A DNA stretch of 64,000 bases, from positions 400,071 to 464,070 of the forward strand of contig NIVC01000268.1 of the NCBI GenBank assembly GCA_002269645.1, read 5' to 3'. This document shows positions 1,150 to 42,986 of the stretch, in pieces. The notes beneath the pieces are model-generated. The model saw only the letters and a program-made list of their open reading frames with translations, did not search any database and had not been told where the DNA came from. The DNA is from Macrostomum lignano (lineage: Eukaryota). The position numbers were made by a program, and so were the translations under genes. Numbering within the stretch: the stretch's first letter is position 1; each line of letters starts with the position of its first letter.

Positions 1150-1410
1150 CCATCAAAAGTATCCCCTATTAATCATATATCCATTATAAATAGCCCTAAT
1201 AAAAATATCCCTTACTAATAATATCCCCATTATCAATATCCCCAAAAAATGCCCTTACTAATAATATCCCCATTATAAACATCCCCAATAAAAATATCCC
1301 CAATAAAAATGCCTTTACTAATAATATCCCAAATAAAAATACCCCTACTAATATTATCCCCATAATAAATATCCCCTTTAAAAGCATCCCCACGCAAAAT
1401 ATGCCCACCC
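1150..1410. repeat. Degenerate AATATCCCC-type short tandem repeat
   Basis: Recurrent AAT(A)TCCCC..TAATAA units just upstream of the AASS acceptor. They explain ORFs 1196-1408 and 1233-1418. Confidence 0.7.
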
Positions 1411-1412
1411 AG

Positions 1413-20178: not shown

Positions 20179-23100
20179 TCAGAAGCGCGTCTCCTCGTGG
20201 TAGCCCTGATTGTCCAGCCCGTCCTCCGGCAGAGCTCGCAGGTGTCCGTCATCGCCTTGACCGACTGCCGAGTCAAAACCGCTCGACCTGTGCCGGAGGT
20301 CCGGGCAGAGGTGCGCCGGATGATCCAGCGAGCTGTACTCCGGCAGAGACAGCTGTTGCTGCTGTTCGTCGTGAATCGAGTGAAGGTAGCCGCTGAATGC
20401 TTCCAGATGGCGGACACATTCACTTGGTCGTCGAGACGAGCCGACGCCGTGTAGCGATGGGTCCTCGCCGGCGCTGTGGCTGATGCTGTAGGTCCGCGTC
20501 TGTCGGCGCCGCTCTCGAGCCGCGTCGTTGGCGTGCTGCGAGATGGACACTCGGCGACTGCGGGTTTGCGAGCGAGTTTGTTTGCAAGGAGCTAAAGCCC
20601 CTTGGTGCTAAAGCCCCTTGGTGCTAAAGCCCCTTGGTGCTAAAGCCCCTTGGTGCTAAAGCCCCTTGGTGCTAAAGCCCCTTGGTGCTAAAGCCCCTTG
20701 GTGCTAAAGCCCCTTGGTGCTAAAGCCCCTTGGTGCTAAAGCCCCTTGGTGCTAAAGCCCCTTGGTGCTAAAGCCCCTTGGTGCTAAAGCCCCTTGGTGC
20801 TAAAGCCCCTTGGTGCTAAAGCCCCTTGGTGCTAAAGCCCCTTGGTGCTAAAGCCCCTTGGTGCTGGCGCCCCTTGGTGCTGGCGCCCCTTGGTGCTAAA
20901 GCCCCTTGGTGCTAAAGCCCCTTGGTGCTAAAGCCCCTTGGTGCTAAAGCCCCTTGGTGCTAAAGCCCTTGGTGCTAAAGCCCCTTGGTGCTAAAGCCCT
21001 TGGTGCTAAAGCCCCTTGGTGCTAAAGCCCCTTGGTGCTAAAGCCCCTTGGTGCTAAAGCCCCTTGGTGCTAAAGCCCCTTGGTGCTAAAGCCCCTTGGT
21101 GCTAAAGCCCCTTGGTGCTAAAGCCCCTTGGTGCTAAAGCCCCTTGGTGCTAAAGCCCCTTGGTGCTAAAGCCCCTTGGTGCTAAAGCCCCTTGGTGCTG
21201 GCGCCCCTTGGTGCTAAAGCCCCTTGGTGCTAAAGCCCCTTGGTGCTAAAGCCCCTTGGTGCTAAAGCCCCTTGGTGCTAAAGCCCCTTGGTGCTAAAGC
21301 CCCTTGGTGCTAAAGCCCCTTGGTGCTAAAGCCCTTGGTGCTAAAGCCCCTTGGTGCTAAGGCCTTGTTAACCTTGCAAACTGTCTTCTGTTTGAGCTTC
21401 TTTTGAAAAGTTCTTTCAGTACTAAAACAGTCGTTGAATAGACAGCATAGAGCTGTCATTTTTACATAGACACTTGCATGAATTACATTAGCTAAACTTA
21501 ATGAAAGTGTTTAATAAAATATTATTTCACTAATGTTCTTTCGTACTCGGATAAACTGACGCCGCTGGTTGATGCACCGCCTTGCTCGCCAATGCTGCTT
21601 CCCGTTTCATCCTGAAAATTATGCAGGCACTCGCAAAAATGTAAATTCCATCTAGATCGAGTCATGGACAGCTGAAGTAGAAGGACTCCCTCGAATCGTA
21701 CGAATGTCGCCGGTAAAAATGTTATTTTTTATTTCACACCTGACCTAATGGGCAGATGTGCAACCGACAGCTCAGTCGCAGCTATTTGCGTGGCGCATCT
21801 GAAGGCTGCGTACGGCTGTTCAGTCCAAGGATTGGGGGCCGTCACACACAGCCTCAATTACCCAGCTAATGCTGGCACCCATTCTAGCTCATTCACCTTG
21901 GTGAACTGAAGCAATGCAGAGTTAAGTGTCTTGTGCTCAAGGAACCAATTGTTCTGAGAGGGTCGAGAATCGAACCACCGACCTTTGATTCCAGAGTTCG
22001 ACTCTCTAACCCCTTTTATAACATTCTTGAACGTTTAATAATTCTAAATTGATGAAGTATGTTTTGTCCGAGGTTGACTCAAAACTTACTCGAATTCGGA
22101 AGTTCAAAAGGTGAAAAATCACTAAAAGCACAAAGAACTTATCAATTTGCAAATTCAGCGTCCTTCTACTTTAGCTATTGATTGCATAATGAACAATATT
22201 TCAGTAGCCTTTGCACCTCAACCAGCTCCTGGTAGAAATTGGACAGCGCGTAAATCACCGCGTCGTGGACGGTCACAAACAGACCAGCTTCGGAGCGTTT
22301 GTCGAAGAAGTTGGCCTTCCTCAGAAGCGAACGGACAAGCGAAGTGCAGCCGGACAAGTACATTTCGACGCCAATTTTACTGAAATCGTCGACAATTTTT
22401 GTCAGCAGACGGACACCCACGGCGTCAATGAAGGCGCAGGCCGACAGGTCCAAGATGATGCAGAAGACGTTTACAGTCGGCTCGCTTTCGTCGTCGCTAT
22501 CAACGGAAGCTGGAAGATCAGCCGAATCGATGGAGCCCATGGATTCGTACGACTTTGAGGCGGTGATTGGCAGGTTCTTGAGCTCCTCCGAGGAGCTCAA
22601 CTGGGCGCGCTGGCGTGCTATGGCGCTCTTTTATGGCAAATAATTTGGGGAAAGGTTAAGTCACTTTGTAAACAATCTCTGGTTAGAAAGTTCGTTTTTT
22701 AGGGGGCAGACTAGTTTAAGCAATCAACTCCGACGTCCGGCTTTCGTGCCAAGGTACCCAGGTTCGATTCCGTGTGTAATTCTACAATAATTTGAGACCC
22801 TGTCCTAAGGCATATCTCGGTAAAGTCAGGGTCGTATGTGTATACGCTCGTACCTGCGTACGTTCGAGTATCTGTGTACGTGTGAGCGATTCGTGGTCAG
22901 AAGGGATGAGCATGATTGCTTGCCTCCTCGTTGGCGTTGGCTACGAAAAAACGTATTACTGAGACAGTACTGTAGTTCTCAATTTTTCTTAGGGCGAGTC
23001 TGGTTGCTTCCCGAATCCATGGTTTGACTTGGACGCGTCGATGTTAACTCGGTGTTCAAGGACAGTAATTATAGTTAAAGGTACAGTGCCTGACAACAAC

Positions 23101-26100
23101 TAGGTCAGAGTTGTTGCAGACCATGTGCTATTTTTGCATGTCTTCTTTTTTATTCCTGTACCTGCCCCTGTACGTGATTTCATGACTGTTGTATTGGTTT
23201 AACAGCAGTAGCCCCCAGCGGAAACGTAGACAGATTAACATGAATCCGTTAAATGATGATTGCAAAAACAATGTCGTTGAATTTACCGGATGACTTCCCT
23301 CTTCCTTGACAACTCCGAGCACTTCCTTGATGCCCTGGGCGTTGAGCACGTCAGTCCGAAGGTTCATATCGCCGCTGGCTCCTCCGCTTCGCTTGGCTGC
23401 GGCTTTAGCGCGTTCGAGAATCTTCTTCGGATTCATGGCCACGGAGCGGAATAGGCGCTTGCGAAAGTTGTCTGCGCTGGCGAAATAGAGCGAGCCGTCG
23501 AATTTAAAAATTTTCAGGCCAGGAATTTCTTCAGCCTGAATAGTAAATATTTTTTGGGTTCACGAATTTCAGTAAAAACGAAGTGTCGATTTTTTGCGAG
23601 GCCATGTTACTTTTTGGCTTGTACTATTCTCAGCTGTTAAGAGTCAACCACTAGAGGCACTGTGCATTACACGACTGGTGATAAGAGTTACGTAGTAAAG
23701 ACTGTTTTACAGCTTGTGTGAGCGCTCACGGACCGTCATGCTGTCCTGTTGACGTAAGTGGCCTAAGAAATGCATAGTGACGGCAGCAACTACTAAGAGA
23801 CTGAGCTACATGCTAGCACGACCGCTATGTACCAATCGTCTTACAATAGCCTCATCGGCCATAACTCGATAGTTTTTTTAAGTTCTCTTTGCTCTGAAAC
23901 TCACCCCTTTAATCTTCTTAATGTTCCTATAAATGTCAGTTTTCGGCACTCGCCCCAGCAGGTAGGCCTTCGGAGCCTGGGTCCGATAAATGATGGTGAG
24001 CAACGAGAAGGCGACCCCGATTCCCAGACCGATGGGCAGGTCCAGACCAAGGATTGCAGCCAGCGTTACAATCCAAATTGACTGTAATTACATGGGAATT
24101 CAACTAATTACAATCAATCATATTGTAAAAAGTAATAAACAGTGAGCGTACAAAGTCGTATCGATTGGTTCGCCACAGTCGAGGCAGTTGCTCCACTTGC
24201 AGGATCATGTTCTTCAAATTCACGATTATAATTGCGGAAAGTACGCACTGAAATTGATAATGCAATTATAATATAGGATTGCTCACTTGATCAGCAAATT
24301 ATGGAATAGACTGCTGATAAACAGGTATTCACCTTGGGTACCGGCTCAAAATAGGAGCAAAAAGTAAGAATGCTGATTAGTGTAATTATTGTAGCGTAAA
24401 CCGAATAGATCTGAAGTGCGAAATAAAATGGCACATTGTAAACGGCATAAGGTATCATTCCTAAATTATGACTCTTACTTAAGGCAACTTTTTCTTACTA
24501 GTGTCTTTCCTCTCATGGACTCGTGCAGCGAGGTGCAAGCAATGGACGAGGCCGACACGAACGTGCTGAACCAGCTCATGCCGAAGTTGACAAATCCGTA
24601 GGCTAGGACCTCCTGGTTGGCGTCCACTTCATATCCGTGACGTAGAGCGAAGGTCTTGGCTACAGACACCGACAGGGCATAGGAGATTATGCCAAGCACG
24701 ATGCCGTTCACTAAAATTCCGGACCCGCTTGTGAAATGCTCCGGCAGTGGAGCGCGCGGCACCTCGAATCTGAAGTTAAATTTTGATGGGTCGCTTTTAA
24801 ACCGGTGTCAGAAATGCGGTGTCAGATGGGTCTTAGTTAAAAAGTTCTATTTGCTTCACACACTTCATGTCTGCATAAAAGTAACCCCGTCAATCTGATA
24901 AAAATGCGTAAAAGTCTTTTTTAATCCTATACTGATGGATAAAGCCATATCCGACACTGACAACCTGACTTTCCATTACTGCTATGTTGAATTGTTTCTA
25001 TTCGTTGCTTCTGTAAATTATGGTTGACTTTCAAAGTAAAAGACGTGTGGCTTTTTCTCAAAGAGAAAGTTTTTGAAAATTTTAATTATACCGTTAAAAG
25101 AAGCGATAGATAACGGTGGCAAAAGTGGTATTTTACATTTTCCAAGCGCGGCTTACCCTTGTCGAATGACGCCAACATTTTCCACTTTAATAGTCCCCTT
25201 CCAATTCATGAACTGCGACATTAGAAGACTTGTAATCAACTGAAATCGAGTTATATTGTGTTTGTGTGCTTCTTATACTCGCATCTTCTCGTAACAACAA
25301 ATCAACGGTTTAAAAAAAATAGCGCAAACCTTACCACAATGATGTCGATTGGAATTGGAATTTTCACATATTTAGAGCACTTCTCGTTCACCAGCTTGAT
25401 GGCCAGCAGCAGAGCAAAGAAGGCTACGAAAATGCCGATTGTGTATCCGTTTACCTGACCGGTGAATAGCCTTTTGAATGCCTCGATAAAGTACTAAATG
25501 GGGTTAGATGGAATACAAAAAAACAGATGTAGACATCTCAACTTATAATACTGACAGAATGTCAAATACCAATGGATTAGGTTACATCTCAAACGAAACT
25601 AGAACAAGTCAACGCTATTGCAAGTTTGTGTCGATTAAAAACTAAACTAGAACGACTAAGAACGACAAAACTAAACTAGAAATTAGTTTATTTCTTAGTA
25701 TTTTTACAGTGTTCTATCTGGACTACTGAATTAAAAAATATGTCCAAGTAGAACAACCATGTGTCTTATCCTACGTTGATTAACAAATTTGTCGAACCAA
25801 AGTTTAACAAAATTTTATCAAAGAGTAATAAGAAATATTTTTAAAGAATTTTTGTTCGAATTCCTTTTGCGAACTTATTTAAAAATTAAATCTCAATTTA
25901 GTGAACAAAACTATATTATGCGCGTTTCCGCTCCATTAATTTTTCTTCAAAACTATTAACATTAATGAACTTGCAAATTAGGACCTGAGTAACTTTATTA
26001 CTAAAAAACGCTCACAATAGTTTACCTGACCACCTGCAAGAACCAAGGCCATTGTTACTCACCATGAAGAATTTCCCGTTGCCATTTATGGCCGGAATTT

Positions 26101-28107
26101 TCGCTCCGAGCAGATTGCCCAACTGACTGCTGACGATGTGCAGCGCAGCGCCGCAGGTGAACGCGCTATTCAACGGATCGGACATGTAGATGGTGAGAAA
26201 GCCCAGCTGCAGAGCGCCCAGCAGAATCTGCAACAGCCCAGCAACCATGGTAATGGATAAGGCCACCATTGCGTTCGCGTCATCCCGGTTAATGCAGCCA
26301 GCTGGAAATGCGAGGGAAAATTCCAGTTATGTTGATTTGACAGGCAAATACGCTTGAATAGCCTCCTAAAATTTTTTTTTAAATTTTTCTACATTTAAAA
26401 AAACTACCGTCGTCTAAAGTTTTTCTATTGGTACAGCTCGACGATAAGTTGTTGAAGTTTCTTTAAAAAGGAATCATAATTAGATAGATTTCGCCACTGA
26501 TGCTTAAAAATGCAAAGAAACCAACCTGTCGCTCCTGTCGTGACATTCGGAGCCGTAGTAACCAAAGCCATTGTTGTAGATTCGGTAGCGATGGTAGTTG
26601 ATTCGTTGCCAGTATACAGACCAGCATTAGAGACTGAGGCAGTTTCGCAGAGTCCAACACCATTGGGGTACACCTGTTGGACACCGGCTCGAACTGCTTC
26701 GCCAACAATTAGCGATACGGCGCCTTGACTTGCTAAAAATTAATTAGTTAATTCGATTTCAAGATTAGCGGTTACATTGTGCATCGATGTTTACCTTTCA
26801 GGGATGCTAAACAAGCAATGCTGTTTTGTCTTTTTGGGTTGTTAATAAAATGACAAATCGACTGTCGATCATGACGGTTGGATTGTTGATGAGGTGACGG
26901 TTGGATTGTTGATGAGGTGACGGTTGGATTGTTGATGAGGTGACGGTTGGACTGTTGATGAGGTGACGGTTGGATTGTTGATGAGGTGACGGTTGGATTG
27001 TTGATGAGGTGACGGTTGGATTGTTGATGAGGTGACGGTTGGATTGTTGATGAGGTTACGGTTGGATTGTTGATGAGGTGACGGTTGGACTGTTGATGAG
27101 GTTACGGTTGGATTGTTGATGAGGTGACGGTTGGACTGTTGATGAGGTGACGGTTGGACTGTTGATGAGGTGACGGTTGGATTGTTGATGAGGTTACGGT
27201 TGGACTGTTGATGAGGTGACGGTTGGACTGTTGATGAGGTGACGGTTGGACTGTTGATGAGGTGACGGTTGGACTGTTGATGAGGTGACGGTTGGACTGT
27301 TGATGAGGTTGGATTGTTAATGAGATGGCGGTTGGATTGTTGATAATGTGACGCTGGGACTGTTTTTCCAATAGATTGAAATTCCAATTAGCTGGATGAC
27401 GGTTCTGTCCTCATTAAATCCTTTAACAAATTTAGAAATGGAAAAGACAAATTAACTTACACATGTTGAGATGATTCGACGTCCCGAAGATAAAGTAGAT
27501 CAGCATAGCAAAAAAGGCCGAATAGAATCCGTATTGCGGCTTCACGTTTGCCAACAATGAGAAAGCGATTGCTAAAATTCAACAAGGAAAAGCTTGACTT
27601 TTTAACGTCATTAAAATTAATTGAAGTGCTTTTTAAACTCACCCTGCGGAATGATGAACAGTCCAACGCTAACACCTGAAATAAGGTCAAACACAGCGTA
27701 CTCGCGAACTTTATAGTTGACAAACACGTTGATGCATGGAAACGCTTTGTTAAGAATTCCCATGGCTTTAGTTTTTATGTCCTTTTTCTCTTTAAATTGA
27801 TTGGCTTTGCGTTGCTGCATCAAATTGATCCGGTGCGCTTTGCGTTCGCTCGGTTCCAGACGAATCTGATACTCTTCTTCCAGCTGCACTTCGTTGTAGG
27901 TCGGCCTGGAAGCAATCGTCCCACCGCGTTTGCCGTCGTCTCCAGCACCGCCACCGGCTGATGCCGTGATGGCTGCGAGATCCGTCAGCCTCTCGTTCGA
28001 CATCTGCTTGCGAAGATCTCTGGGAATGTTGGCCGGGTTTCGGTTCGGCTGGCCGGCTCCGCCGCCGCCGCCACCGCCGCCACCACCCCAGGACGTCCCG
28101 AAGACAT
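20179..28107 (-). CDS. SLC26/SulP anion transporter with STAS domain (prestin/pendrin-like), paralogue A
   Basis: 14 exons: 27643-28107 (or -28003), 27461-27571, 26526-26732, 26063-26301, 25335-25493, 25157-25239, 24499-24769, 24333-24410, 24152-24247, 23905-24081, 23287-23535, 22217-22627, 21547-21611, 20179-20557. All are GT-AG and in phase. Motifs DLISGVSVG..IPQ, YGFYSAFF, IPIPIDI, NQEVLAYG, VNLKNM, FKFDGSLYFAS and IILDLSACAFIDAVG. The start is uncertain because of an apparent 1-nt frameshift near 28086-28089. Confidence 0.92.
20591..21362. repeat. 16-bp minisatellite (GCTAAAGCCCCTTGGT), last intron of SLC26-A
   Basis: Highly homogeneous tandem copies. Confidence 0.97.
21737..22012 (-). 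mobile_element. tRNA-derived SINE, family 1, copy 2 (more degenerate)
   Basis: Shares CAGATGTGCAACCGACAGCTCAG, CATCTGAAGGCTGCGTACGGCTGTTCAGTCCAAGGA and GAATCGAACC with 18700-18985. Confidence 0.8.
22725..22890 (+). mobile_element. Degenerate SINE fragment
   Basis: B-box GGTTCGATTCC at about 22761, and CCTGCGTACG shared with the SINE at 46828-47193. Confidence 0.4.
26870..27335. repeat. 23-bp minisatellite (GACGGTTGGATTGTTGATGAGGT), intron 2 of SLC26-A
   Basis: Tandem copies visible. Confidence 0.95.
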
Positions 28108-28205
28108 GTCAAATTTGTTAGAATTTTCCCAGTTTTCCAAAATTAATTCACTCGACGTTCGGATAACTGGGGAATGGTTATAAAAGGGGATGTGAAATTA
28201 AGAGT

Positions 28206-28761
28206 CAAAATGAAGCCCGAAATATACGGTCCCGATTTCTCTAAGCAAATCCCTTCATTTGGAGCCAAATTGCTCCCATTATGCCGAAAACGCGACCAAT
28301 GTAGCATTTGGGGATCTCTACGCTCTTATGGGGAGAAATGGTTGTGAGGGAGCTTATAGCACCTTTGACCATGATATAAATGTGCTATTTATGTCTCCAC
28401 GGAGACAGGGAAACACAATGAGAGCTTGGTTGGGGGCAATAACAAACAATATTGAGATAACATAATGGAGGGCACAACATATCATTACTATATCGCTTCT
28501 ATTCTTCATACTAACACATAAAAATAGCGTTTATCGTCATATAAGCATTTGAAGCTCCAAATGAAGGTATTGGCGTAGAGAAACCGGGACCCAATGCTTC
28601 ATGCTCCATTCTGGAGCCTTAGTTAAGTTCACGTGAAATCCTCATTTATTCGTTTTTCCCCATAGAGATCCCCAAATGCTAAACGGGTTGGTTTTTGGTG
28701 GTCGGAAGCAATTTGGCTCCAAGTAGGGAAATCGGGACCGTATATTTCGGGCTTCATTTTG
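28206..28761. mobile_element. Foldback/MITE-like element with nested inverted repeats
   Basis: Perfect 34-bp terminal IR (CAAAATGAAGCCCGAAATATACGGTCCCGATTTC, 28206-28239 / 28728-28761). Inner IRs TTGGAGCCAAATTGCT and TAGCATTTGGGGATCTCTA. Confidence 0.8.
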
Positions 28762-29317
28762 GCTATTCTGTTTCAAAAATAGGCCCTTAATTTATAATGC
28801 TAACAACCTACCATCTTATCCAGCAACAACTTACCCAAACAGTAGCAACAGCCAGATCTCGGAATCGTCCTTCGAAAGAATCAACTCTTCTACTAAGACG
28901 AGGCTAAAAAAATCAGCTATTTAGAGTCAGAAAAATGGAGAAGAGATCAGGGCTAATTAAGCACCGGAAGAGAATGCAGAACAATTTGCTGCTTTAAGAC
29001 CTGTGAAACTTGTTGGAATTAGCTGACTCTGCATTTGCCTGTGCCAAGCTCTGTAATAGCTAATGAATTACCGGAAAAGAAAACAGTAATCAAGCGCGTT
29101 TAGCACTCTCAGACTTTATGGTTAACCGTTGAATTTCCAATATCAATACCAATTTTCTGAATCACTGAGTTCGTCGGTTTCGACTGATTGCAATTGGCAA
29201 ATGTGTCTTTAGAATTGAGTCAGGACATTGTATAGAAAATGAGGTATGTTGAGAGGCATGCTGAACTTTGCAATAGAATGACTCAATTAATAAGTTTTAG
29301 CATCATAAGATTTCATC

Positions 29318-29845
29318 TGAGGGGGCACCATTTCATCTGAGGGGGCGCCAGTTCATCTGAGGGGCGCCAGTTTATTTGAGAGGGCGCCAGTTCATCTGAG
29401 GGGGCGCCAGTTCATCTGAGGGGGCGCCAGTTCATCTGAGGGGGCGCCAGTTCATCTGAGGGGGCGCCAGTTCATCTGAGGGGGCGCCAGTTCATCTGAG
29501 GGGGCGCCAGTTCATCTGAGGGGGCGCCAGTTCATCTGAGGGGGCGCCAGTTTATTTGAGAGGGCGCCAGTTCATCTGAGGGGGCGCCAGTTCATCTGAG
29601 GGGGCGCCAGTTTATTTGAGAGGGCGCCAGTTCATCTGAGGGGGCGCCAGTTCATCTGAGGGGGCGCCAGTTTATTTGAGAGGGCGCCAGTTCATCTGAA
29701 GGGGCGCCAGTTCATCTGAGGGAGCGCCAGTTCATCTGAGGGGGCGCCAGTTCATCTGAGGGGGCGCCAGTTCATCTGGGGGGGCGCCAGTTCATCTGAG
29801 GGAGCGCCAGTTCATCTGAGGGGGCGCCAGTTCATCTGAAGGACA
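29318..29845. repeat. 20-bp minisatellite (TTCATCTGAGGGGGCGCCAG)
   Basis: Tandem copies in the region between the SLC26 paralogues. Confidence 0.95.
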
Positions 29846-30487
29846 CTATTTTATTGGAGAGGGCGCGCCATTTAATTTGACGGGACGCCATTTCCAAGAG
29901 AGCGTATTGCATTGCGACCGAAAAAAACGAATTCACCAAGCTGTATGTTTGTTTTAATCGCAGTCAAATATTCTCAACACCGACAACTGTGACCGAGTTT
30001 TGTAGAAGGGGCTGCTGTTTCTGCAACTCAGTTGCTTATTCGTCGCCAAACTAATTTTGGCTTCCCGTCAAAAAGTACCGCTTGCAAAGGGGCAACGGCT
30101 TGCGGCTTCATTAGCAAATTCGACGTATTCTGCTCACTGCCTTGACTTTATTGCGTTCTTTCTTATAAGTCAACCCCTTCGTGCTTAAAACCGAGAGCAG
30201 CGAACAAGCTGATAAAACTTTGACGTTCGTCCGACGTTCGGTTTGGGTTTAAAGTAGAAAAACTTTACGTTATAAACTGCATTCAAGATAAAGACAGTGA
30301 AGCAGAACTCCCTGATCAGGACTTGGTCTGTGAGCCTCACTGACTGCTTAAGAATGCACTAAAAGCAGTCACGGTTCACCCTCATGGTCATAAGATCGAA
30401 CGCTATTTGAAGTTTCCAACAAAAGTATATCGCCTTTAAATTGCCTAAAAAAGAAGAACATCAAAGTTAATTAGCTGAAATACTTAC

Positions 30488-31050
<563 letters not shown>

Positions 31051-31544
31051 CTTCCCTTTAACGCCCATAGTGAGTCATGCGTGTGGCACGGAGGTTCAGT
31101 ATTTTTCAATAGCCTTCAAAGGGAGTAGCCGTTCAGATACGGTAGACGCCAAAGGCTGGATGTCGAGCAGGCATATTATGACTTTTACTTGCCAGTCACC
31201 AGTGGGCAATGCATTATCGTTTTCTGTCTTATCAGCTTAGGGCGCGAGTTTTACAGCGCAGAGATAGATAGCCCCCAGCAAGCTTGAGGTCACAAAAGCG
31301 CATAAATAGAATGAAGAAATGAGCGCAATGCCAGAAACGCTATCAATTCGTGCTGAGCACTTATTCGGAATTTTTTGTTATCGACTTTGAGCAAAGCCTG
31401 AACGTCGAGCATAACGGACCGAATTTGATTGCTGAGCAGTGGAAAACAGAAAGACGACGGCTTACACACTGTTTTGCTTAAACCAAGTCTTTCTTCTCTT
31501 GAAACGATCGAGGTAAGTCGAGTAATAATGTGAACGGTCCGTAA

Positions 31545-33672
31545 CGAATTCTAATGAACTCTCAATGGGATTCGAATGTAATCTATCGAATTCTAATGAA
31601 CTCTCAATGGGATTCGAATGTAATCTATCGAATTCTAATGAACTCTCAATGGGATTCGAATGTAATCTATCGAATTCTAATGAACTCTCAATGGGATTCG
31701 AATGTAATCTATCGAATTCTAATGAACTCTCAATGGGATTCGAATGTAATCTATCGAATTCTAATGAACTCTCAATGGGATTCGAATGTAATCTATCGAA
31801 TTCTAATGAACTCTCAATGGGATTCGAATGTAATCTATCGAATTCTAATGAACTCTCAATGGGATTCGAATGTAATCTATCGAATTCTAATGAACTCTCA
31901 ATGGGATTCGAATGTAATCTATCGAATTCTAATGAACTCTCAATGGGATTCGAATGTAATCTATCGAATTCTAATGAACTCTCAATGGGATTCGAATGTA
32001 ATCTATCGAATTCTAATGAACTCTCAAAGGGATTCGAATGTAATCTATCGAATTCTAATGAACTCTCAATGGGTTCGAATGTAATCTATCGAACTCTAAT
32101 GAACTCTCAATGGGTTCGAATGTAATCTATCGAATTCTAATGAACTCTCAATGGGATTCGAATGTAATCTATCGAATTCTAATGAACTCTCAATGGGATT
32201 CGAATGTAATCTATCAAACTCTAATGAACTCTCAATGGGATTCGAATGTAATCTATCGAATTCTAATGAACTCTCAATGGGATTCGAATGTAATCTATCG
32301 AATTCTAATGAACTCTCAATGGGATTCGAATGTAATCTATCGAATTCTAATGAACTCTCAATGGGATTCGAATGTAATCTATCGAATTCTAATGAACTCT
32401 CAATGGGATTCGAATGTAATCTATCGAATTCTAATGAACTCTCAATGGGATTCGAATGTAATCTATCGAATTCTAATGAACTCTCAATGGGATTCGAATG
32501 TAATCTATCGAATTATAATGAACTCTCAAAGGGATTCGAATGTAATCTATCGAATTCTAATGAACTCTCAATGGGTTCGAATGTAATCTATCGAACTCTA
32601 ATGAACTCTCAATGGGTTCGAATGTAATCTATCGAATTCTAATGAACTCTCAATGGGATTCGAATGTAATCTATCGAATTCTAATGAACTCTCAATGGGA
32701 TTCGAATGTAATCTATCGAATTCTAATGAACTCTCAATGGGATTCGAATGTAATCTATCAAACTCTAATGAACTCTCAATGGGATTCGAATGTAATCTAT
32801 CGAATTCTAATGAACTCTCAATGGGATTCGAATGTAATCTATCGAATTCTAATGAACTCTCAATGGGATTCGAATGTAATCTATCGAATTCTAATGAACT
32901 CTCAATGGGATTCGAATGTAATCTATCGAATTCTAATGAACTCTCAATGGGATTCGAATGTAATCTATCGAATTCTAATGAACTCTCAATGGGATTCGAA
33001 TGTAATCTATCGAATTCTAATGAACTCTCAATGGGATTCGAATGTAATCTATCGAATTCTAATGAACTCTCAATGGGATTCGAATGTAATCTATCGAATT
33101 CTAATGAACTCTCAATGGGTTCGAATGTAATCTATCGAACTCTAATGAACTCTCAATGGGTTCGAATGTAATCTATCGAATTCTAATGAACTCTCAATGG
33201 GATTCGAATGTAATCTATCGAATTCTAATGAACTCTCAATGGGATTCGAATGTAATCTATCAAACTCTAATGAACTCTCAATGGGATTCGAATGTAATCT
33301 ATCGAATTCTAATGAACTCTCAATGGGATTCGAATGTAATCTATCAAACTCTAATGAACTCTCAATGGGATTCGAATGTAATCTATCGAATTCTAATGAA
33401 CTCTCAATGGGATTCGAATGTAATCTATCGAATTCTAATGAACTCTCAATGGGATTCGAATGTAATCTATCGAATTCTAATGAACTCTCAATGGGATTCG
33501 AATGTAATCTATCGAATTCTAATGAACTCTCAATGGGATTCGAATGTAATCTATCGAATTCTAATGAACTCTCAATGGGATTCGAATGTAATCTATCGAA
33601 TTCTAATGAACTCTCAATGGGATTCGAATGTAATCTATCAAACTCTAATGAACTCTCAAAGGGATTTGAATG
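31545..33672. repeat. 42-bp satellite with higher-order structure
   Basis: Unit ATGAACTCTCAATGGGATTCGAATGTAATCTATCGAATTCTA. Paired 41-bp deletion variants occur at 32069/32110, 32571/32612 and 33115/33156. Confidence 0.97.
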
Positions 33673-33744
33673 TAGAGTTCGATCTCAGAATGACCAAAAA
33701 ATGATTCCATCATACTCATTAATACTCAAACAGAAGCGACAGCC

Positions 33745-36700
33745 ATGACGGACAAAGACTTCAGGAGGCCAAGCGTCGCCTCCCTCAGCGAGTTGCGCAA
33801 CCAACTGCCTGACGATCTTCGTCAGCAGCAGAACTCGCGACAGACCGCGTCGAGGCCAACCTACACGGAGGTGCAGCTGGAGGAGGTGCACCAAATCAAA
33901 CTGGATGACGACGAGAAAATCCGGCACAAGAAGCAGCTTATGGAAAATCGCAAGGCCGGCCCGAAAGAAGTCCGTAGCAAAGGCGCCGTGGCTTTGGGAA
34001 TACTTAGTAAAATATTTCCCGTAATAAAGGTTTTCGTCAACTACAAAGTCAAAGAGTACGCGGTGTACGATCTCCTGTCAGGAATTAGTGTGGGAATGTT
34101 TATCATTCCTCAAGGTGAGCGGGGTTACTACGGTTTCTAATAGCTAATGTATTCACAGATGCCACTATTTACTGTCGTCATTGACAACTGACGTAGAAGG
34201 ATGCTAACACGTTCAATTTCTTAGAAATCTGCACTAGAAAAATCTGATTTCTTAGCGTCCTTCTTTATCGGTCTTCAGTTAATACTAACACCACCATCAC
34301 CTATTTCAGCCATCGCTTTTTCCCTGCTGGCCCAGGTGAAGCCTCAATACGGTTTTTATTCCGCTTTCTTTGCCATGCTGATTTACTTTATTTTCGGCAC
34401 CTCAAATCATCTGAATATGTGTAAGTTTGACGCCTGCTATTTCAATTTTTATATGCTCTTGGAGATAGAAATCTGACAAGGAAGCTGCGTGTACTTCTCT
34501 GCTTTTCAAGTCTCCGTGTTTGTCACTCTTTTAACAGGTGACTTCTCTGTGTCTGACAGGTGACTTCTCTGTGTCTGACAGCTGACCCCTCTGTGTCTAA
34601 CATGTAACTCCTCTGTGTCTAACAGGTGACCCCTCTGTGTCTAACATGTAACTCCTCTGTGTCTAACAGGTGACTCCTCTGTGTCTAACAGGTGACTCCT
34701 CTGTGTCTAACAGCTGACCCCTCTGTGTCTAACAGGTGACTCCTCTGTATCTAACAGGTGACTCCTCTGTGTCTAACAGGTGACTCCTCTGTATCTAACA
34801 GGTGACTCCTCTGTGTCTATCAGGTGACTCCTCTGTATCTAACAGGTGACTCCTCTGTGTCTAACAGGTGACTCCTCTGTGTCTAACAGGTGACTTCTCT
34901 GTATCTGACAGGTGACTTCTCTGTGTCTAACAGGTGACTTCTCTGTGTCTAACAGGTGAATCCTCTGTATCTAACAGGTGACTTCTCTGTATCTGACAGG
35001 TGACTTCTCTGTGTCTAACAGGTGACTCCTCTGTGTCTATCAGGTGACTCCTCTGTATCTAACAGGTGACTCCTCTGTGTCTAACAGGTGACTCCTCTGT
35101 GTCTAACAGGTGACTTCTCTGTATCTGACAGGTGACTTCTCTGTGTCTAACAGGTGACTTCTCTGTGTCTAACAGGTGAATCCTCTGTATCTAACAGGTG
35201 ACTTCTCTGTATCTGACAGGTGACTTCTCTGTGTCTAACAGGTGACTCCTCTGTGTCTAACAGGTGACTTCTCTGTATCTGACAGGTGACTTCTCTGTGT
35301 CTGGCAGGTGACTCCTCTGTGTCTGGCAGGTGACTCCTCTGTGTCTAACAGGTGACTCCTCTGTATCTAACAGGTGGCTCATCTGTATCTAACAGGTGAC
35401 TTCTCTGTGTCTAACAGGTGACTCCTCTGTGTCTAACAGGTGACTCCTCTGTATCTAACAGGTGACTCATCTGTGTCTAACAGGTGACTTCTCTGTGTCT
35501 AACAGGTGACTTCTCTGTATCTGACAGGTGACTTCTCTGTGTCTAACAGGTGACTCCTCTGTGTCTAACAGGTGACTTCTCTGTGTCTAACAGGTGACTC
35601 ATCTGTGTCTAACAGGTGACTCCTCTGTATCTAACAGGTGACTTCTCTGTATCTGACAGGTGACTTCTCTGTGTCTAACAGGTGACTTCTCTGTGTCTAA
35701 CAGGTGACTCCTCTGTATCTAACAGGTGACTCCTCTGTGTCTAACAGGTGACTCCTCTGTGTCTAACAGGTGACTCCTCTGTATCTAACAGGTGACTTCT
35801 CTGTATCTGACAGGTGACTTCTCTGTGTCTAACAGGTGACTCCTCTGTGTCTAACAGGTGACTCCTCTGTATCTAACAGGTGGCTCATCTGTATCTAACA
35901 GGTGACTTCTCTGTGTCTAACAGGTGACTCCTCTGTGTCTAACAGGTGACTCCTCTGTATCTAACAGGTGACTCATCTGTGTCTAACAGGTGACTTCTCT
36001 GTGTCTAACAGGTGACTCCTCTGTGTCTAACAAGTGACTCCTATATCGGGTGACTCTCAATCTAATGAGTGATTGAAAAAAAACCAAAAACGTCAGCTCA
36101 CCGCCAACCAACCCCCAATTCAGCCAGTCAAGGTGCCGTTTCGCTCCTGGTCGGCGAAGCTGTGCTTGCTGGCGTGGAACAAGTGCACCCTAACGGGGCC
36201 GGGATCTGCGTCGAGCCTAACGACACCATCACCACTTTGGGGCCGAATCTGAACTTCACTGATCTAACGACTGAGATGACGACAACTTTGCTGACGACTA
36301 CAATGGATATGACTGGAATTAACAGCACCGCTAGTAAGGAAAATTCCTGTCTGGGTTGGGTCAGATAAGCCTCAGTTTGAAAGTAATAAAAATTGTTACT
36401 TACCCAATTTGAAACTGGTTCTTAAAGAAAAATTATTTTGTCGTCAATCCCAGACCCGGACATGTGCGTCCCCCGAGCTGACGCCAACACTCTGGTCTCA
36501 ATATCCATCACCATGGTGGCCGGAGCTGTCCAATTGCTGCTCGGATTGCTGCAGTTCGGCTTTCTCACCATCTACCTGTCCGATCCGTTGAACAGCGCGT
36601 TCACCTGCGGGGCCGCTCTGCACATCTTAAGCAGCCAATTGGCCAACATGCTCGGCACGACTCTCCCGCCAATCTCGGGTGTTGGAAAATTCTTCGTGGT

Positions 36701-39700
36701 GAGTCACGTTTGAGTTGGTTTTGGGTGCTAGGATATATCGAATAGAGCTGTGCAACTTGAGCAGTTTGCTCTTATATCGGTCAATCTACTTTGGCGAATT
36801 CTCTTAGCTGTCAATGTACCGCGTCCCTATTAGGTTTATGATAATCTAAGAAGACAACCAATTAGTTATTTGACCGGCCCTTTGCTTCGTTTCAGTACTT
36901 TGTAGAGGCGTTCAAACAGATTTCTGCCGGAAACGTAAACGTAGCATCCATCATAATATGTTTGGTATCTTTTGCTGTGCTGCTAGCTGTCAAGCTAATT
37001 AACGAAAAATGCTCTAAGTACGTCAAAATTCCTATTCCAGTCGACATTATTGTGGTGAGTTTTGCCAGCATTTTTTGCACATAAGGAATTCTTAACACGT
37101 CATAGATTTTCTATATGGTCAAGAAAATACTTTACGCTCGTAGGTTGCCAGAGATTAGATTAATTCTATGAATACCAAGGACATCTTAAGGAAGTCAAGG
37201 TTGTCTTTTGATGTCAAAAAATGTCTTAAAATGTTAAGGACGTCGTAGGATATCGTCTTAGGATGTTAGAGACATATTAGGCTGTCAAGAATTTCAAGGT
37301 CTTAGGATGTCAAGAGTGTATTAGGATGTCAAGGATGTCTTAGAATTACAAGTATGTCTTCGGATGTCAAGAGTGTATTAGGGTGTCAAGGATGTCTTAG
37401 GAGTTCAAGGATGTCTTAGGATGTCAAGAATGTTTTAGGAATTCAGGGATATCAAGGATGCTTTAGAATGTCAAGAATGTCCAGGATATCTTAGGATGTC
37501 AAGGATGTCAAGGATGTCTTAGGATATCAAGGATGTCTTGGGATCTCAAGGACAAGATGTTAAGGATATCTTAGAATGTCAAAGATGTTTTAGGACATTA
37601 TCAAGAGTGTATAAATCGACTTTAAAGACACATAATAATTTCGACCGGAAACGTTTCACTGTGGTAAAACATTTAAAAACATGATCCACTTGCTTCTCAA
37701 AACGCTAATTAAGCTTGTGACGAGTTTGCTGCTGTCACAGTTTCTGAACTGGGAAACCGAGCTAGATATTTCAACTGTCGGAGCCATTGAGAGAGGGTGA
37801 GCGATTTCTTCGAATGTTTTTATTTTAATGCTCAATCAAGGCGCATTTACAATAGCTTGAAGTTCCTACTCAAAACGAACCTTCAGATTCCGGGCACCTA
37901 CCGCTCCCCCCGTTGAGCACTTCACCAGCGGAACTGGGATCATAATTAACGGCTTGGTACTCGGTATTATATCGTACTCGCTCTCCGTCTCTGTCGCCAA
38001 AACTTTCGCCGTTCGATACGGCTACGAAGTGGACTCGAACCAGGAGATGATCGCCTACGGCGCTGTGAATTTTGGGATGAGCTGGTTCAGCACCTTCGTG
38101 TCCGCTTCGTCTATCGCTTGTACGTCGCTGCACGAGTCTATGCGAGGCAGAACTCTGGTGAGTGCAGTTTACGAATAACGAATAACGGTGTTGTTACGGT
38201 GTTGTTACGGATCTTGTAACCTCAAACTGCCGCGTGCAGCTGTCCTCGGTTGAAAGCCAATTAGCCCCGCCGATAATATTTTTCTAGTCCCTGACTAGAT
38301 GAGAGAAGTCCTTGGTGCCTTTACTGCAGAATTCAGAACCATTCAGAACCACCAATTCAGAAACACCAGAATAACACTTGAGTATAGTTTTTGAAAATAT
38401 AGGCCTGTCTACTGAATTTTATAGATAAAATATACAATAAAATATATGAAATGTACAGTATAATGTACAGTAGAGCCTTCTTACAAAGACAAAACGCTGC
38501 CTTCTAAGAAATTAAACGCTTACGTAGCCGTGTTGAAGTGGCAGCGATAGTCTATGGCCAGGCTTATGGCCAGCCATGGTTAGAACAAATCAAATAATCA
38601 AATTAAATAAATAAACGAATAAACGAATAATTCAATAATAAATCATAAGTGAAAGAGTAGCTCGTTTCAATTTGGTATCTTGTACTCAATTGTACTCAAT
38701 TGTACTCAATGATGAGGATCCGTGCAGAGAAATAGATGCCTGAGACCCTAACGGCACAGAGATTTTACAGACCTAGCAAGAAAAAAGTCAAAGCGCTCTA
38801 CACATGTGTGTTTATGTTTCAGCGAAATGCGTATAACTACACTCGAACTTGCTTCATCACGGGTTTAATAATAATCAAGTAATATTATATCGTATTTGTA
38901 ACAACGCTTTTAATGAATCATCTGCACTTTTTAACGATAAATACTTTAATCATATATATATATTAAAAAATATGCGCCCACTTCCAGCTCTACTCGCTCT
39001 ATGCAACGATAATCACCTTAGTTGGAATTCTGACTTTCGCTCCTGTGTTTGCCCCGGTTCCAAAGGTAAGCTATTGAGATGTAAGCTGCAATGTACTCAG
39101 CAAACAATTGATTTCTGTTTTCTTATTCTAGTGCGTCTTGTCAGCTATCATTTTGGTTAATCTGAAGAACATGATGATGCAAGTTGAACAGCTGCCAGGA
39201 CTCTGGAGAACTAATCGATACGATTTTGTGAGTTTTTTTTGTACTTTTTGTTCGAATTTTTAGAACAGGTAATGTTTAGTCCAATGTCGAGAATATCGCC
39301 TTAGCGTTTGAGGATATCAGATCGGTAGCAACACCATTGTATTCCGGTTCAGTTCTATGAGAGCCAACCCCGAAGGCGTAGACTCACAGGGGTCGGCAAA
39401 CTCCCGCACATGCGGCCCGTAAAGCCTCTATCCTTTGAGACTTAAGAACAGCTTGTGCCTCTTCTCAGCTCTCTTCTCCCCTCTTCTGTTTTCTCTTCGC
39501 TCCTCTCGTCTTCTCTCCTCGCCTCTCCTTTTTTCTCTCCTCTTTTCTCTACTCTACTCTCTTCTCTTTCCTCTTCTCTCCTCTCCTCTCGTCTTCTCTA
39601 TTCTCCTTCAATACCCCACCACTCCTTTCTCCTAAATCTCTTATCTCTTCTCTGTTTCCCCTCTTTCTCCTCTCCCTTTTCTGGCCCGCAGTCAAGCACT

Positions 39701-42700: not shown

Positions 42701-42986
42701 AAACGTTTAGTTCCCGATCAGTAATCGAGTTTCACTGTTAGACGCCTTGCAGAACCCCTCTAAAGTAGACTCTAGCACTAATCTAAATTAACCATAAGTA
42801 TCTTTACAGTGCATATTAAAAATGAAAATTGAAAACCCGAATTTTCAGGTGCACGAAGACGAAGAATCCCGGCGCGAACGGGAGGAAATGGACTTGAACT
42901 TTGCCGAGATGCTGAAAAGCCTACCAGACACGGACGATGACGACGCTGGGGAGGACAACGCCGGCTTCCAGGACTCCGCGCTTTGA
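33745..42986 (+). CDS. SLC26/SulP anion transporter with STAS domain (prestin/pendrin-like), paralogue B (about 990 aa)
   Basis: 15 exons: 33745-34114, 34310-34420, 36124-36333, 36454-36698, 36896-37054, 37714-37796, 37887-38157, 38988-39065, 39132-39227, 39977-40153, 40558-40806, 40978-41352, 41696-41760, 41943-~42288, 42849-42986. All are GT-AG and in phase; many exon lengths equal those of paralogue A. The donor at 42288 is the least certain border. Confidence 0.93.
34535..36050. repeat. 22-bp minisatellite (CTAACAGGTGACTCCTCTGTGT), intron 2 of SLC26-B
   Basis: Tandem copies visible. Confidence 0.96.
37170..37600. repeat. Degenerate GGATGTCAA/GGATGTCTTA short-unit repeat, intron 5 of SLC26-B
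   Basis: Recurrent 9-10-bp units. Confidence 0.8.
39387..39733 (+). mobile_element. hAT/Charlie-like MITE remnant with CT-rich interior
   Basis: Left end CAGGGGTCGGCAAAC...GCGGCCCG and internal TGGCCCGC/TGGCCC motifs resemble non-autonomous hAT elements. The right TIR was not found. Confidence 0.4.

What the first reader, a model, noticed from the sequence alone, without database searches (positions are those of the whole stretch)
24499..38157. Both SLC26 paralogues carry a rebuilt anion-binding pocket (F137Q, S398A, R399C equivalents)
Seen: both genes read GTSNHLNMSSQGAVSL in TM3 (Gln codon 26725-26727 in A, 36129-36131 in B) and TFVSASSIACTSLHESMRG in TM10 (Cys codon 24535-24537 in A, 38119-38121 in B). 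Established: prestin has GTSRHISIGPFAVISL and TFSISCSLSRSLVQEGTGG, and F137, S398 and R399 (pendrin F141, S408, R409) line the anion site. By gap-free manual alignment, G-P-F becomes S-S-Q, Ser becomes Ala and Arg becomes Cys. Equivalents of Q97, F101, E374 and the VNLK motif are kept, and the transmembrane and STAS exons are intact. Inference: the same substitutions in two diverged, intact paralogues suggest a selected change of function, such as a different or neutral substrate, a channel or sensor role, or a non-transporting role, rather than decay.
Basis: partly seen in the sequence, partly recalled or inferred. Interest (0 to 1): 0.78.

Follow-up and report, generated by a model that had tools for sequence, protein, structure and literature searches.

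The report
Flatworm SLC26 transporters with uncharged pocket
Two intact, head-to-head SLC26 anion-transporter genes of the flatworm Macrostomum lignano belong to an old flatworm-only subfamily that has replaced the usual arginine and phenylalanine of the anion site with small uncharged residues and a glutamine, so they probably move anions differently from the classical exchangers, though nobody has tested this.

Summary
The window is Macrostomum lignano DNA. Gene A (minus strand, identical to annotated BOX15_Mlig016666g2) and gene B (plus strand) are complete SLC26 genes, 65% identical. Both read GTSNHLNMSSQGAVSL and SSIACTSLHES.

HMMER and MAFFT alignments to prestin and pendrin are gap-free there: Gly-Pro-Phe becomes Ser-Ser-Gln, Ser398 becomes Ala, Arg399 becomes Cys. 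This is not decay: synonymous sites are saturated while pN is 0.07–0.16.

The motif is not private to these two genes. A Gln/non-basic pocket (x-Q-G in TM3; Cys, Val or Ala at the Arg position) marks a flatworm clade. It includes two more M. lignano subgroups and Schmidtea mediterranea Slc26a-1, which is gut-expressed and functionally untested.

Outside the clade, 140 of 149 representative SLC26 proteins keep Arg/Lys, and none has Gln at the Phe position. Ser-to-Ala alone is common and unremarkable.

The nearest functional precedent is SLC26A9, which has Val at the Arg position and carries out uncoupled Cl- transport. The clade is not close to SLC26A9 in sequence, so this looks like an independent loss.

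My best guess is uncoupled monovalent-anion transport in an epithelium. That is inferred, not shown. I class it as a new variant of a known kind, of moderate interest.

The parts
20179..28108 (-). Gene A. A complete SLC26 gene equal to M. lignano BOX15_Mlig016666g2 (P0001, 996 aa). The exons I verified for the TM and STAS parts are 27643-28003(+5' extension to 28108), 27461-27571, 26526-26732, 26063-26301, 25335-25493, 25157-25239, 24499-24769, 24333-24410, 24152-24247, 23905-24081, 23287-23535 and 22217-22627. C-terminal exons lie near 21540-21610 and at 20182-20556. The protein ends in ...ETRF.
   Evidence: Splice sites are all GT-AG. tblastn of P0001 against the window is 97-100% identical over residues 8-996. 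Pfam finds Sulfate_transp at 1.8e-82 and STAS at 8.9e-17.
33745..42986 (+). Gene B. The paralogous SLC26 gene, 65% amino-acid identity to gene A, lying head-to-head with it. Exons are 33745-34114, 34310-34420, 36124-36333 (probable donor; my first model used 36354), 36454-36698, 36896-37054, 37714-37796, 37887-38157, 38988-39065, 39132-39227, 39977-40153, 40558-40806 and 40978-~41350. C-terminal exons are 41944-42291 and 42849-42983. The protein ends in ...DSAL.
   Evidence: The annotated relatives P0004 and P0005 match the window at 100% over most exons. Pfam finds Sulfate_transp at 2.7e-84 and STAS at 2.6e-15.
26725..26727 (-). Gene A Gln codon (CAA). This is Gln195 of P0001, at the position of prestin Phe137 / SLC26A9 Phe128, capping the N-terminus of half-helix TM3.
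   Evidence: The AlphaFold model starts the TM3 helix one residue later.
24535..24540 (-). Gene A Ala-Cys codons (GCT TGC), Ala499-Cys500 of P0001, at the positions of prestin Ser398-Arg399 / SLC26A6 Ser403-Arg404 / SLC26A9 Ser392-Val393, at the N-terminus of half-helix TM10.
   Evidence: The model's TM10 helix starts at the preceding Ile. The SLC26A6 and SLC26A9 numbering comes from PMC10328499.
36129..36131 (+). Gene B Gln codon (CAA, Gln163), at the same position as in gene A.
38116..38121 (+). Gene B Ala-Cys codons (GCT TGT), at the same positions as in gene A.
28109..33744 (.). Intergenic spacer of 5.6 kb between the two divergently oriented genes. It is largely minisatellite arrays: a 20-mer at 29312-29839, ATAG at 30488-31050 and a 42-mer at 31545-33674.

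Best explanation
Genes A and B are functional members of an ancient, flatworm-restricted SLC26 subfamily. I call it 'Q-type'; the planarian member is Smed-slc26a-1. The central anion pocket of this subfamily was remodelled once and then kept.

Shown: the fold, both domains and the TM1 pocket residues (Gln and Phe) are standard SLC26. Four things differ:
- The basic residue at the N-terminus of TM10 is replaced by a small uncharged one (Cys here; Val or Ala in relatives).
- The Phe that caps the pocket at the N-terminus of TM3 is replaced by Gln followed by Gly.
- The Ser that in prestin lies close to that Arg is Asn, Val or Ala.
- In genes A and B the second TM10 Ser is also Ala.

Inferred: the two half-helix dipoles, the retained first TM10 Ser (the prestin Ser396 equivalent) and the new Gln amide still form an anion site, but one without a countercharge. 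In SLC26A9, and in the R404V and R399V mutants, that situation goes with loss of coupled Cl-/HCO3- (or divalent) exchange and with uncoupled electrogenic Cl- movement.

My best guess is therefore that these proteins are uncoupled monovalent-anion (Cl-/halide-type) transporters in the plasma membrane of an epithelium, probably gut. The membrane and tissue guess rests on three points: the N-glycosylation sequons in the TM3-TM4 loop, the class I PDZ-ligand C-termini, and the gut expression of the planarian relative.
For: Identity and integrity:
- Gene A is 100% identical to annotated P0001.
- Both Pfam domains are found.
- The AlphaFold2 model has a mean pLDDT of 78.7, about 90 in the TM helices.
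- Foldseek's best matches are prestin, SLC26A6, SLC26A3 and pendrin, with target-normalised TM-scores of 0.7-0.86.

Register:
- Searches agree.

Selection:
- A versus B gives pS 0.73 (saturated) and pN 0.07-0.16 in the TM and STAS parts.
- The Gln codon is CAA in A and B but CAG in P0002.
- Both motifs are invariant across four distinct G1 proteins (genes A and B, P0002, P0003).

Rarity:
- In 61 other animal homologues the Gly is 61/61, Phe/Tyr 59/61, Ser/Thr 60/61 and Arg/Lys 61/61.
- In the 149 best representatives from an exhaustive scan of 1.84 billion proteins, Arg/Lys is 140/149. Gln at the Phe position is 4/149, and all four are in this clade.

Clade:
- Members are the M. lignano Mlig027200, Mlig006231 and Mlig022511 groups, S. 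mediterranea Slc26a-1 and three unnamed transcripts. All have Q-G in TM3 and, wherever TM10 is present in the sequence (P0132 stops before it), Cys, Val or Ala at the Arg position.
- A neighbour-joining tree built without the signature columns recovers the clade in 147 of 200 bootstraps. Its subgroups are recovered in 190-200 of 200.

Functional precedent:
- SLC26A9 is the only mammalian paralogue without the basic residue, and it is an uncoupled Cl- transporter (PMC6656431).
- SLC26A6 R404V loses coupled exchange and gains slow uncoupled Cl- flux (PMC10328499).
- Prestin R399V gains a small uncoupled Cl- flux, and SLC26A9 V393R is inactive (PMC11078650).
- In prestin the helix dipoles contribute more to Cl- binding than Arg399 does, and Ser396 is essential (PMC9584906). 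The Ser396 equivalent is retained here.
- SLC26A9 and the planarian-type subgroup share an L-V-P-G stretch before TM3, although SLC26A9 is among their most distant relatives in the set. This suggests convergence.

Tissue:
- Smed-slc26a-1 is expressed in the gastrovascular system/gut (PMC4500094, supplementary file 1).
Against: - No transport measurement exists for any member of the clade.
[quoted passage not shown] The mutant fluxes are small.
- The clade does not share SLC26A9's other hallmark substitutions. SLC26A9 keeps Phe128 and Ser392, whereas here these are Gln and Ala. The SLC26A9 residues Ala396, Val397 and Ala400 correspond to Leu, His and Met here.
- A Gln amide could partly replace the Arg as an anion ligand and so preserve coupled exchange.
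- Pendrin R409C is a loss-of-function disease allele, so Cys at this position is not by itself permissive.
- Support for a single origin of the pocket is only moderate (73% bootstrap on a distance tree).
- I could not inspect model coordinates, so the pocket geometry and the orientation of the Gln side chain are unverified.
- Gut expression is known only for the planarian member, which belongs to a different subgroup.
Confidence: 0.42

Rival explanations
1. The proteins are still coupled anion exchangers (Cl-/HCO3- or similar). The Gln amide and the retained first TM10 Ser take over the ligand role of Arg and Ser398, so the change tunes affinity or selectivity rather than the transport mode.
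For: - In prestin the helix dipoles dominate Cl- binding and Arg399 sits 4.5 Å from the ion (PMC9584906).
- The Ser396 equivalent, the TM1 Gln and Phe, NQE and VNLK are all kept.
- Overall the proteins are most similar to SLC26A5/A6/A3-type proteins.
- The C-termini are PDZ-ligand-like, as reported for apical exchangers (the comparison with mammalian exchangers is from my own knowledge).
Against: - Every tested removal of the basic residue from a coupled SLC26 (R404V, the R409 disease alleles, R399V) abolished the coupled or motor function.
- Arg404 is proposed to contact HCO3- and oxalate directly.
Confidence: 0.3
2. The pocket has been re-purposed for a different class of substrate, such as a neutral or weakly acidic small molecule or a 'soft' anion. 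The model is the related NCS2/UraA-UapA fold, where a Gln near the half-helix ends binds uncharged nucleobases. In some members two Cys residues face the site.
For: - Gln is invariant in the clade while the residue at the Arg position drifts among Cys, Val and Ala.
- The Mlig027200-type genes have Cys both just before the Gln (TCQG) and at the Arg position (SM[ST]CS).
- The fold is shared with UraA (Foldseek hit 8omz).
- The role of Gln in NCS2 transporters is from my own knowledge.
Against: - The cysteines are not conserved across the clade.
- The rest of the pocket and the helix-dipole geometry are typical of anion-carrying SLC26 proteins.
- No SLC26/SulP member is known to carry an uncharged substrate.
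Confidence: 0.12
3. The proteins no longer transport. They act as regulators, scaffolds or sensors through the STAS domain and the PDZ-ligand tail.
For: - STAS domains of mammalian SLC26 proteins interact with CFTR (my own knowledge).
- The C-terminal tails are long, with conserved ends ETRF, ETKF and DSAL.
- Pendrin R409C is non-functional.
Against: - The strongest constraint lies in the TM core. pN is 0.07 in TM1-3 and the pocket motifs are invariant, while the cytoplasmic linker evolves fast (pN 0.47). This fits a protein whose membrane mechanism still matters.
Confidence: 0.08
4. The pattern is an artefact or decay: mis-spliced gene models, a shifted alignment, or young pseudogenes.
For: - The SSQ motif spans an exon junction.
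- My first models for two other junctions of gene B were wrong.
Against: - The junction is shared by the annotated protein, by a paralogue with the same intron phase, and by an intron-free transcript of a related species.
- The register is gap-free by two methods.
- Synonymous sites are saturated while replacement divergence is low.
- All exons are open with GT-AG borders.
Confidence: 0.02

Closest known systems
Schmidtea mediterranea Slc26a-1 (UniProt A0A0H3YF67; Vu et al. 2015, eLife 4:e07405)
   Same: It belongs to the same Q-type clade. It has Q-G at the TM3 N-terminus and a non-basic residue (Ala) at the Arg position, followed by LHES. It is an SLC26 with a STAS domain.
   Different: It is only about 39% identical to gene A in the TM domain and sits in a different subgroup (G2). 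It keeps the Gly before TM3 and the second TM10 Ser (GAQG / SMSAS against SSQG / SIAC here). It is known only as an in-situ pattern (gut); RNAi was not tested and no transport data exist.
SLC26A9 (vertebrate uncoupled, channel-like Cl- transporter; PDB 6RTC, 7CH1)
   Same: It lacks the basic residue at the TM10 N-terminus (Val393). Its pocket is uncharged, so divalent anions and HCO3- are excluded. The residue aligned with prestin Ser133 is Val, as in the G2 flatworm genes. It is epithelial and ends in a PDZ-type motif.
   Different: It is not an orthologue. An SLC26A9-like representative is among the least similar of 159 sequences compared (30-36% identity). SLC26A9 keeps Phe128 and Ser392, which here are Gln and Ala. 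SLC26A9 has Ala390 where these genes keep Ser. Its helix-10 packing residues (Ala396, Val397, Ala400) are not shared.
SLC26A5 (prestin) / SLC26A6 / SLC26A3 / SLC26A4: canonical SLC26A exchangers and the motor protein
   Same: These are the best sequence and structure matches (prestin 8e-135; Foldseek 2.9e-41). They share the 14-TM core/gate fold, the STAS domain, the TM1 Gln and Phe, the NQE and VNLK motifs and a glycosylated TM3-TM4 loop.
   Different: Identity is about 30-33%. The canonical pocket Gly-x-Phe ... Ser-Arg is replaced by Ser-Ser-Gln ... Ala-Cys. The TM3-TM4 loop is much longer (about 55-65 residues) and contains two conserved Cys.
Engineered or disease variants at the basic residue (SLC26A6 R404V, prestin R399V, pendrin R409C/H/L/P)
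   Same: They carry the same kind of change at the same position. Pendrin R409C is literally the same residue.
   Different: Those are single substitutions in an otherwise canonical pocket, and they cripple function. Here the change comes with co-varying substitutions on the TM3 side and has been maintained through speciation and repeated gene duplication.

Membership tests
SLC26/SulP anion transporter family | Sulfate_transp (PF00916) membrane domain | tested here: met
   Gene A scores 1.8e-82 and gene B 2.7e-84, both full-length matches to the profile.
SLC26/SulP anion transporter family | C-terminal cytoplasmic STAS domain (PF01740) | tested here: met
   Gene A scores 8.9e-17 and gene B 2.6e-15. 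The domain is split by a variable insertion, as in animal SLC26 proteins (model).
SLC26/SulP anion transporter family | 7+7 inverted-repeat fold with two half-helices (TM3 and TM10) whose N-termini meet in mid-membrane | tested here: met
   In the AlphaFold2 model, short helices start at Gly196 and Ile498 (P0001 numbering), each preceded by an extended segment. Foldseek target-normalised TM-scores are 0.7-0.86 to prestin, SLC26A6, A3, A4, A7 and A9.
Canonical coupled SLC26A exchangers/motor (A1-A8 type) | Basic residue (Arg/Lys) at the N-terminus of TM10 (prestin R399, pendrin R409, SLC26A6 R404) | tested here: not met
   It is Cys in both genes. Arg/Lys occurs in 61 of 61 and in 140 of 149 comparison sequences.
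Canonical coupled SLC26A exchangers/motor (A1-A8 type) | Gly-x-Phe/Tyr at the N-terminus of TM3 (prestin G135-P136-F137) | tested here: not met
   It is Ser-Ser-Gln in both genes. Gly occurs in 61 of 61 and Phe/Tyr in 59 of 61 other homologues.
Canonical coupled SLC26A exchangers/motor (A1-A8 type) | Coupled, electroneutral or fixed-stoichiometry anion exchange | not testable with these tools
   This needs flux or electrophysiology measurements.
SLC26A9-type uncoupled Cl- transporters | Non-polar or uncharged residue in place of the TM10 Arg | tested here: met
   Cys here, Val393 in SLC26A9.
SLC26A9-type uncoupled Cl- transporters | Orthology with vertebrate SLC26A9, and SLC26A9's other pocket residues (Phe128, Ser392, Ala390) | tested here: not met
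   An SLC26A9-like representative (P0193) ranks 159th of 159 in identity to gene A. The pocket residues here are Gln, Ala and Ser instead.
SLC26A9-type uncoupled Cl- transporters | Fast uncoupled Cl- conductance, with no HCO3- or SO4 transport | not testable with these tools
   This needs expression and patch or voltage clamp.
Flatworm 'Q-type' SLC26 clade (Smed-slc26a-1-like; defined here) | Q-G at the TM3 N-terminus together with Cys, Val or Ala at the TM10 Arg position, and monophyly when those columns are removed | tested here: met
   Every clade sequence with the region present shows both features. Neighbour-joining bootstrap support is 147/200 for the clade, 200/200 for the window's subgroup and 190/200 for the other subgroup.

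The most novel reading that the evidence does not exclude
Rhabditophoran flatworms carry an old SLC26 subfamily that independently of vertebrate SLC26A9 gave up the pocket arginine. It rebuilt the site around a glutamine, giving a second, differently engineered route to uncoupled (channel-like) anion transport, or possibly a substrate class new for SLC26. If so, it is a natural 'mutant series' (Cys, Val or Ala at one position with an invariant Gln) for working out what sets coupling and selectivity in elevator-type anion transporters.
Probability: 0.35. Interest if true: 0.6.

Novelty: new variant of a known kind. Interest (0 to 1): 0.45.

Why it matters
An open question for SLC26 proteins is how one fold yields coupled exchangers, a channel-like uniporter and a motor. 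The only natural example without the pocket arginine has been SLC26A9, and single-residue swaps reproduce its behaviour only weakly.

A second, independent and long-conserved lineage without the arginine would help. It has a different compensating residue (Gln for Phe) and natural Cys/Val/Ala variation. That gives experimenters a comparative handle on which pocket features set coupling and selectivity.

It also flags a probable gut anion pathway in free-living flatworm models (Macrostomum and Schmidtea), where RNAi and transgenesis are available. The genes themselves are ordinary in every other respect, and all functional claims are inference.

Tried and rejected
- From GC content and microsatellites I first assumed an insect genome. 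The protein search showed it is Macrostomum lignano.
- My first gene-B model used a weak donor (36354) and an upstream acceptor (40942). The annotated relatives indicate 36333 and 40978 instead. Neither junction affects the pocket motifs.
I repeated it with database sequences.
- The word-indexed search with a nine-sequence clade alignment returned nothing new and did not even list some of the query members. A single-sequence search with P0125 was what found the Schmidtea gene and further M. lignano paralogues.
- I tested whether the clade is related to SLC26A9. It is not.
- I tested whether the group-1-specific Gly-to-Arg/Lys change in 'GGKT' (RGKT/KGKT) could be a general compensation for the lost Arg. 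It is absent from the other subgroups, so I rejected it as a clade-wide feature.
- Literature searches for flatworm SLC26 function and for the Mlig gene identifiers found nothing relevant.
- I could not determine which organisms the Logan samples ERR14224705 and SRR30276804 come from.

Full report
**What is in the window.** The region holds two multi-exon eukaryotic genes lying head-to-head, 5.6 kb apart. I built GT-AG models for both. Gene A is on the minus strand and gene B on the plus strand. Each encodes an SLC26 protein with a full Sulfate_transp domain and a STAS domain. The two are 65% identical.

A database search identified the organism as the flatworm Macrostomum lignano. Gene A is 100% identical to the annotated protein BOX15_Mlig016666g2 (P0001, 996 aa). 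That annotation adds an upstream start codon and C-terminal exons. Gene A therefore runs from about 20179 to 28108 and gene B from 33745 to about 42986, both wider than the finding's coordinates. Two of my gene-B junctions (the exon 3 donor and the exon 12 acceptor) were probably wrong and are corrected from the annotated relatives. Neither touches the pocket motifs.

**Checking the observation.** Both genes read GTSNHLNMSSQGAVSL and TFVSASSIACTSLHESMRG.

The SSQ tripeptide spans the exon 2/3 junction, a phase-1 intron. Three results support that junction:
- The annotated P0001 uses it.
- The paralogue P0002 has an intron at the same place and phase, with Gln encoded by CAG rather than CAA.
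- An intron-free transcript contig from another sample (P0132) reads NMTNQGAVSLL without interruption.

phmmer against all PDB sequences aligns these stretches to prestin and pendrin without gaps. Ser-Ser-Gln lies over Gly-Pro-Phe137, and Ala-Cys lies over Ser398-Arg399. MAFFT alignments of 66 and 153 sequences give the same columns.

An AlphaFold2 model has a mean pLDDT of 78.7, about 90 in the membrane helices. It starts the TM3 half-helix one residue after the Gln and the TM10 half-helix one residue before the Ala. Its best structural matches are prestin, SLC26A6, SLC26A3 and pendrin.

**Is it decay?** No. Between A and B the synonymous sites are saturated (pS about 0.73). The proportion of non-synonymous differences is 0.07 in TM1-3, 0.16 in TM4-14 and 0.13-0.16 in the STAS core. 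It is 0.42-0.49 in the N-terminus, the extracellular loop and the STAS insertion. The membrane core is the most constrained part of the protein. Both pocket motifs are invariant in four distinct M. lignano proteins of this subgroup.

**How unusual are the residues?**
- Among 61 other animal homologues, the Gly before TM3 is invariant (61/61). The Phe position is Phe/Tyr in 59, the Ser398 position is Ser/Thr in 60, and the Arg position is Arg/Lys in 61.
- I then ran an exhaustive HMMER scan of 1.84 billion representative proteins. In its 149 best hits the Arg position is Arg/Lys in 140. Gln at the Phe position occurs only four times, always in relatives of these genes.
- Ala (18) or Pro (37) at the Ser398 position, with the Arg kept, is common. 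The third substitution in the finding's title is therefore unremarkable on its own.
The invariant Gly becomes Ser or Thr. The Ala after Phe becomes Gly. The residue equivalent to prestin Ser133 becomes Asn; in prestin that Ser is described as lying close to Arg399 and likely interacting with it electrostatically (PMC9584906).

**A wider clade.** The sequences carrying Gln turned out to be further flatworm genes:
- Other M. lignano groups (Mlig027200, Mlig006231, Mlig022511) have TCQG or SCQG in TM3 and SM[ST]CS in TM10.
- Schmidtea mediterranea Slc26a-1 has GAQG and SMSAS.
- Unnamed transcripts from three sequencing runs have Val or Ala at the Arg position, or are truncated before TM10.

I built a neighbour-joining tree of 160 sequences from 409 membrane-domain columns, with the signature columns removed. 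It recovers the whole 'Q-type' clade in 147 of 200 bootstraps. The window's subgroup is recovered in 200 of 200, and the subgroup joining M. lignano and planarian genes in 190 of 200.

One subgroup contains both a macrostomid and a triclad. The pocket change therefore most likely predates the split of those lineages and has been kept since. The Gln is invariant and the Arg position drifts among Cys, Val and Ala.

M. lignano also has a conventional SLC26 that keeps the Arg (P0123). Within M. lignano, the window's subgroup forms at least two clusters. One is the head-to-head pair in this window. The other is a tandem pair (P0003 and P0002) on contig NIVC01001359.1.

**What is known about these positions.**
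- Walter et al. 2019 state that SLC26A9 is the only mammalian paralogue lacking a positive residue at this position. They link this to its inability to carry sulfate or bicarbonate (PMC6656431).
- Tippett et al. 2023 show that SLC26A6 R404V loses coupled Cl-/HCO3- exchange and gains slow uncoupled Cl- transport. [quoted passage not shown] - Futamata et al. 2022 find that the helix dipoles contribute more to Cl- binding than Arg399 does. They also find that S396A abolishes prestin's capacitance, that S398A prestin still shows capacitance, and that F137A shifts its voltage dependence (PMC9584906).
- The flatworm proteins keep the Ser396 equivalent.

**Most likely mechanism.** Shown: these are intact, constrained SLC26 proteins. 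Their pocket has no countercharge and carries a new polar amide on the TM3 side.

Inferred: an anion can still be held by the two helix ends, the retained Ser and the Gln, but in a low-field site. Every experimental case so far associates such a site with loss of coupled exchange and of divalent or bicarbonate transport, and with uncoupled Cl- movement. I therefore favour uncoupled monovalent-anion transport (confidence about 0.4).

Three points fit a plasma-membrane epithelial role:
- The TM3-TM4 loop is long, with N-x-S/T sequons and two conserved Cys.
- The C-terminal ends (ETRF, ETKF, DSAL) are class I PDZ-ligand-like.
- Smed-slc26a-1 is expressed in the gut (Vu et al. 2015, supplementary file 1).

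The resemblance to SLC26A9 is convergent. An SLC26A9-like sequence is among the least similar in the comparison set, yet SLC26A9 and the planarian-type genes share L-V-P-G before TM3.

The rivals are a still-coupled exchanger in which the Gln substitutes for the Arg (about 0.3), a new substrate class (about 0.12), a non-transporting role (about 0.08), and artefact or decay (about 0.02).

**Novelty and verdict.** The genes are annotated only as hypothetical or STAS-domain proteins. The planarian relative has been cloned and mapped by in situ hybridisation but not studied functionally. I found no paper describing the altered pocket.

This is a new variant of a known kind. Interest is moderate: useful to people working on SLC26 mechanism and on flatworm physiology, but not a surprise at the level of a new system.

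Noticed in passing
window 20182-20193 (gene A C-terminus, minus strand) and 42972-42983 (gene B C-terminus): The predicted C-termini end in ...EETRF (gene A) and ...QDSAL (gene B). The paralogues P0002 and P0003 end in ...ETKF. All fit class I PDZ-ligand motifs (S/T-x-hydrophobic). From memory, mammalian apical SLC26A3, A6 and A9 and CFTR have similar tails.
   Followed up: partly
window 26526-26700 (gene A exon 3) and 36160-36333 (gene B exon 3): The TM3-TM4 extracellular loop is unusually long, about 55-65 residues, and fast-evolving (pN 0.49). It has several N-x-S/T sequons and two Cys that are invariant in the subgroup, which may form a loop disulfide.
   Followed up: partly
window 24508-24519 (gene A) and 38137-38148 (gene B): The nearly universal 'GGKT' after TM10 is 'RGKT' or 'KGKT' in this subgroup only. 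This puts a basic residue at the predicted cytoplasmic end of TM10. It is absent from the other Q-type subgroups.
   Followed up: partly
window 26872-27364 (gene A intron 2) and 34532-36042 (gene B intron 2): The intron that splits the SSQ motif carries a large minisatellite in both genes (23-mer x 21.7 copies and 22-mer x 68.7 copies). The repeat units differ. The window as a whole is rich in such arrays, for example a 21-mer x 128 copies at 2960-5683 and a 42-mer x 51 copies at 31545-33674.
   Followed up: no
window 50535-53456, minus strand: A single 974-codon open frame matches the C-terminal region of UNC80 (PF20262, 5.4e-204). This would be a subunit of the NALCN channel complex, so a large UNC80 gene lies downstream of gene B.
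   Followed up: partly
window 17815-18375, plus strand: An open frame with a WSC domain (PF01822, 1.3e-13) lies next to gene A's 3' end. One UniProt model (P0279, 1472 aa, 'WSC domain-containing protein') fuses WSC and SLC26 domains, which is probably a mis-merged prediction.
   Followed up: no
window 1369-2049, plus strand: An exon-like open frame matches the saccharopine dehydrogenase C-terminal domain (PF16653, 3.8e-42).
   Followed up: no
P0004 (UniProt A0A1I8GRS8) compared with window 36896-37054: One database isoform of gene B lacks exon 5 (53 residues, a transmembrane segment). This would break the topology, so it is probably an annotation artefact rather than real alternative splicing.
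   Followed up: no
L003 1-17588 (GCA_002269645.1, contig NIVC01001359.1): The two other members of the window's subgroup (P0003 and P0002) lie in tandem in the same orientation about 3.6 kb apart. The subgroup is therefore organised as at least two two-gene clusters with different orientations.
   Followed up: partly
P0127, P0128, P0304 and P0305 (other M. lignano loci, not in the window): The second M. lignano subgroup has Cys both immediately before the pocket Gln (T/S-C-Q-G) and at the Arg position (S-M-S/T-C-S). Two thiols would then face the site. I cannot tell whether they form a disulfide or ligate something.
   Followed up: no
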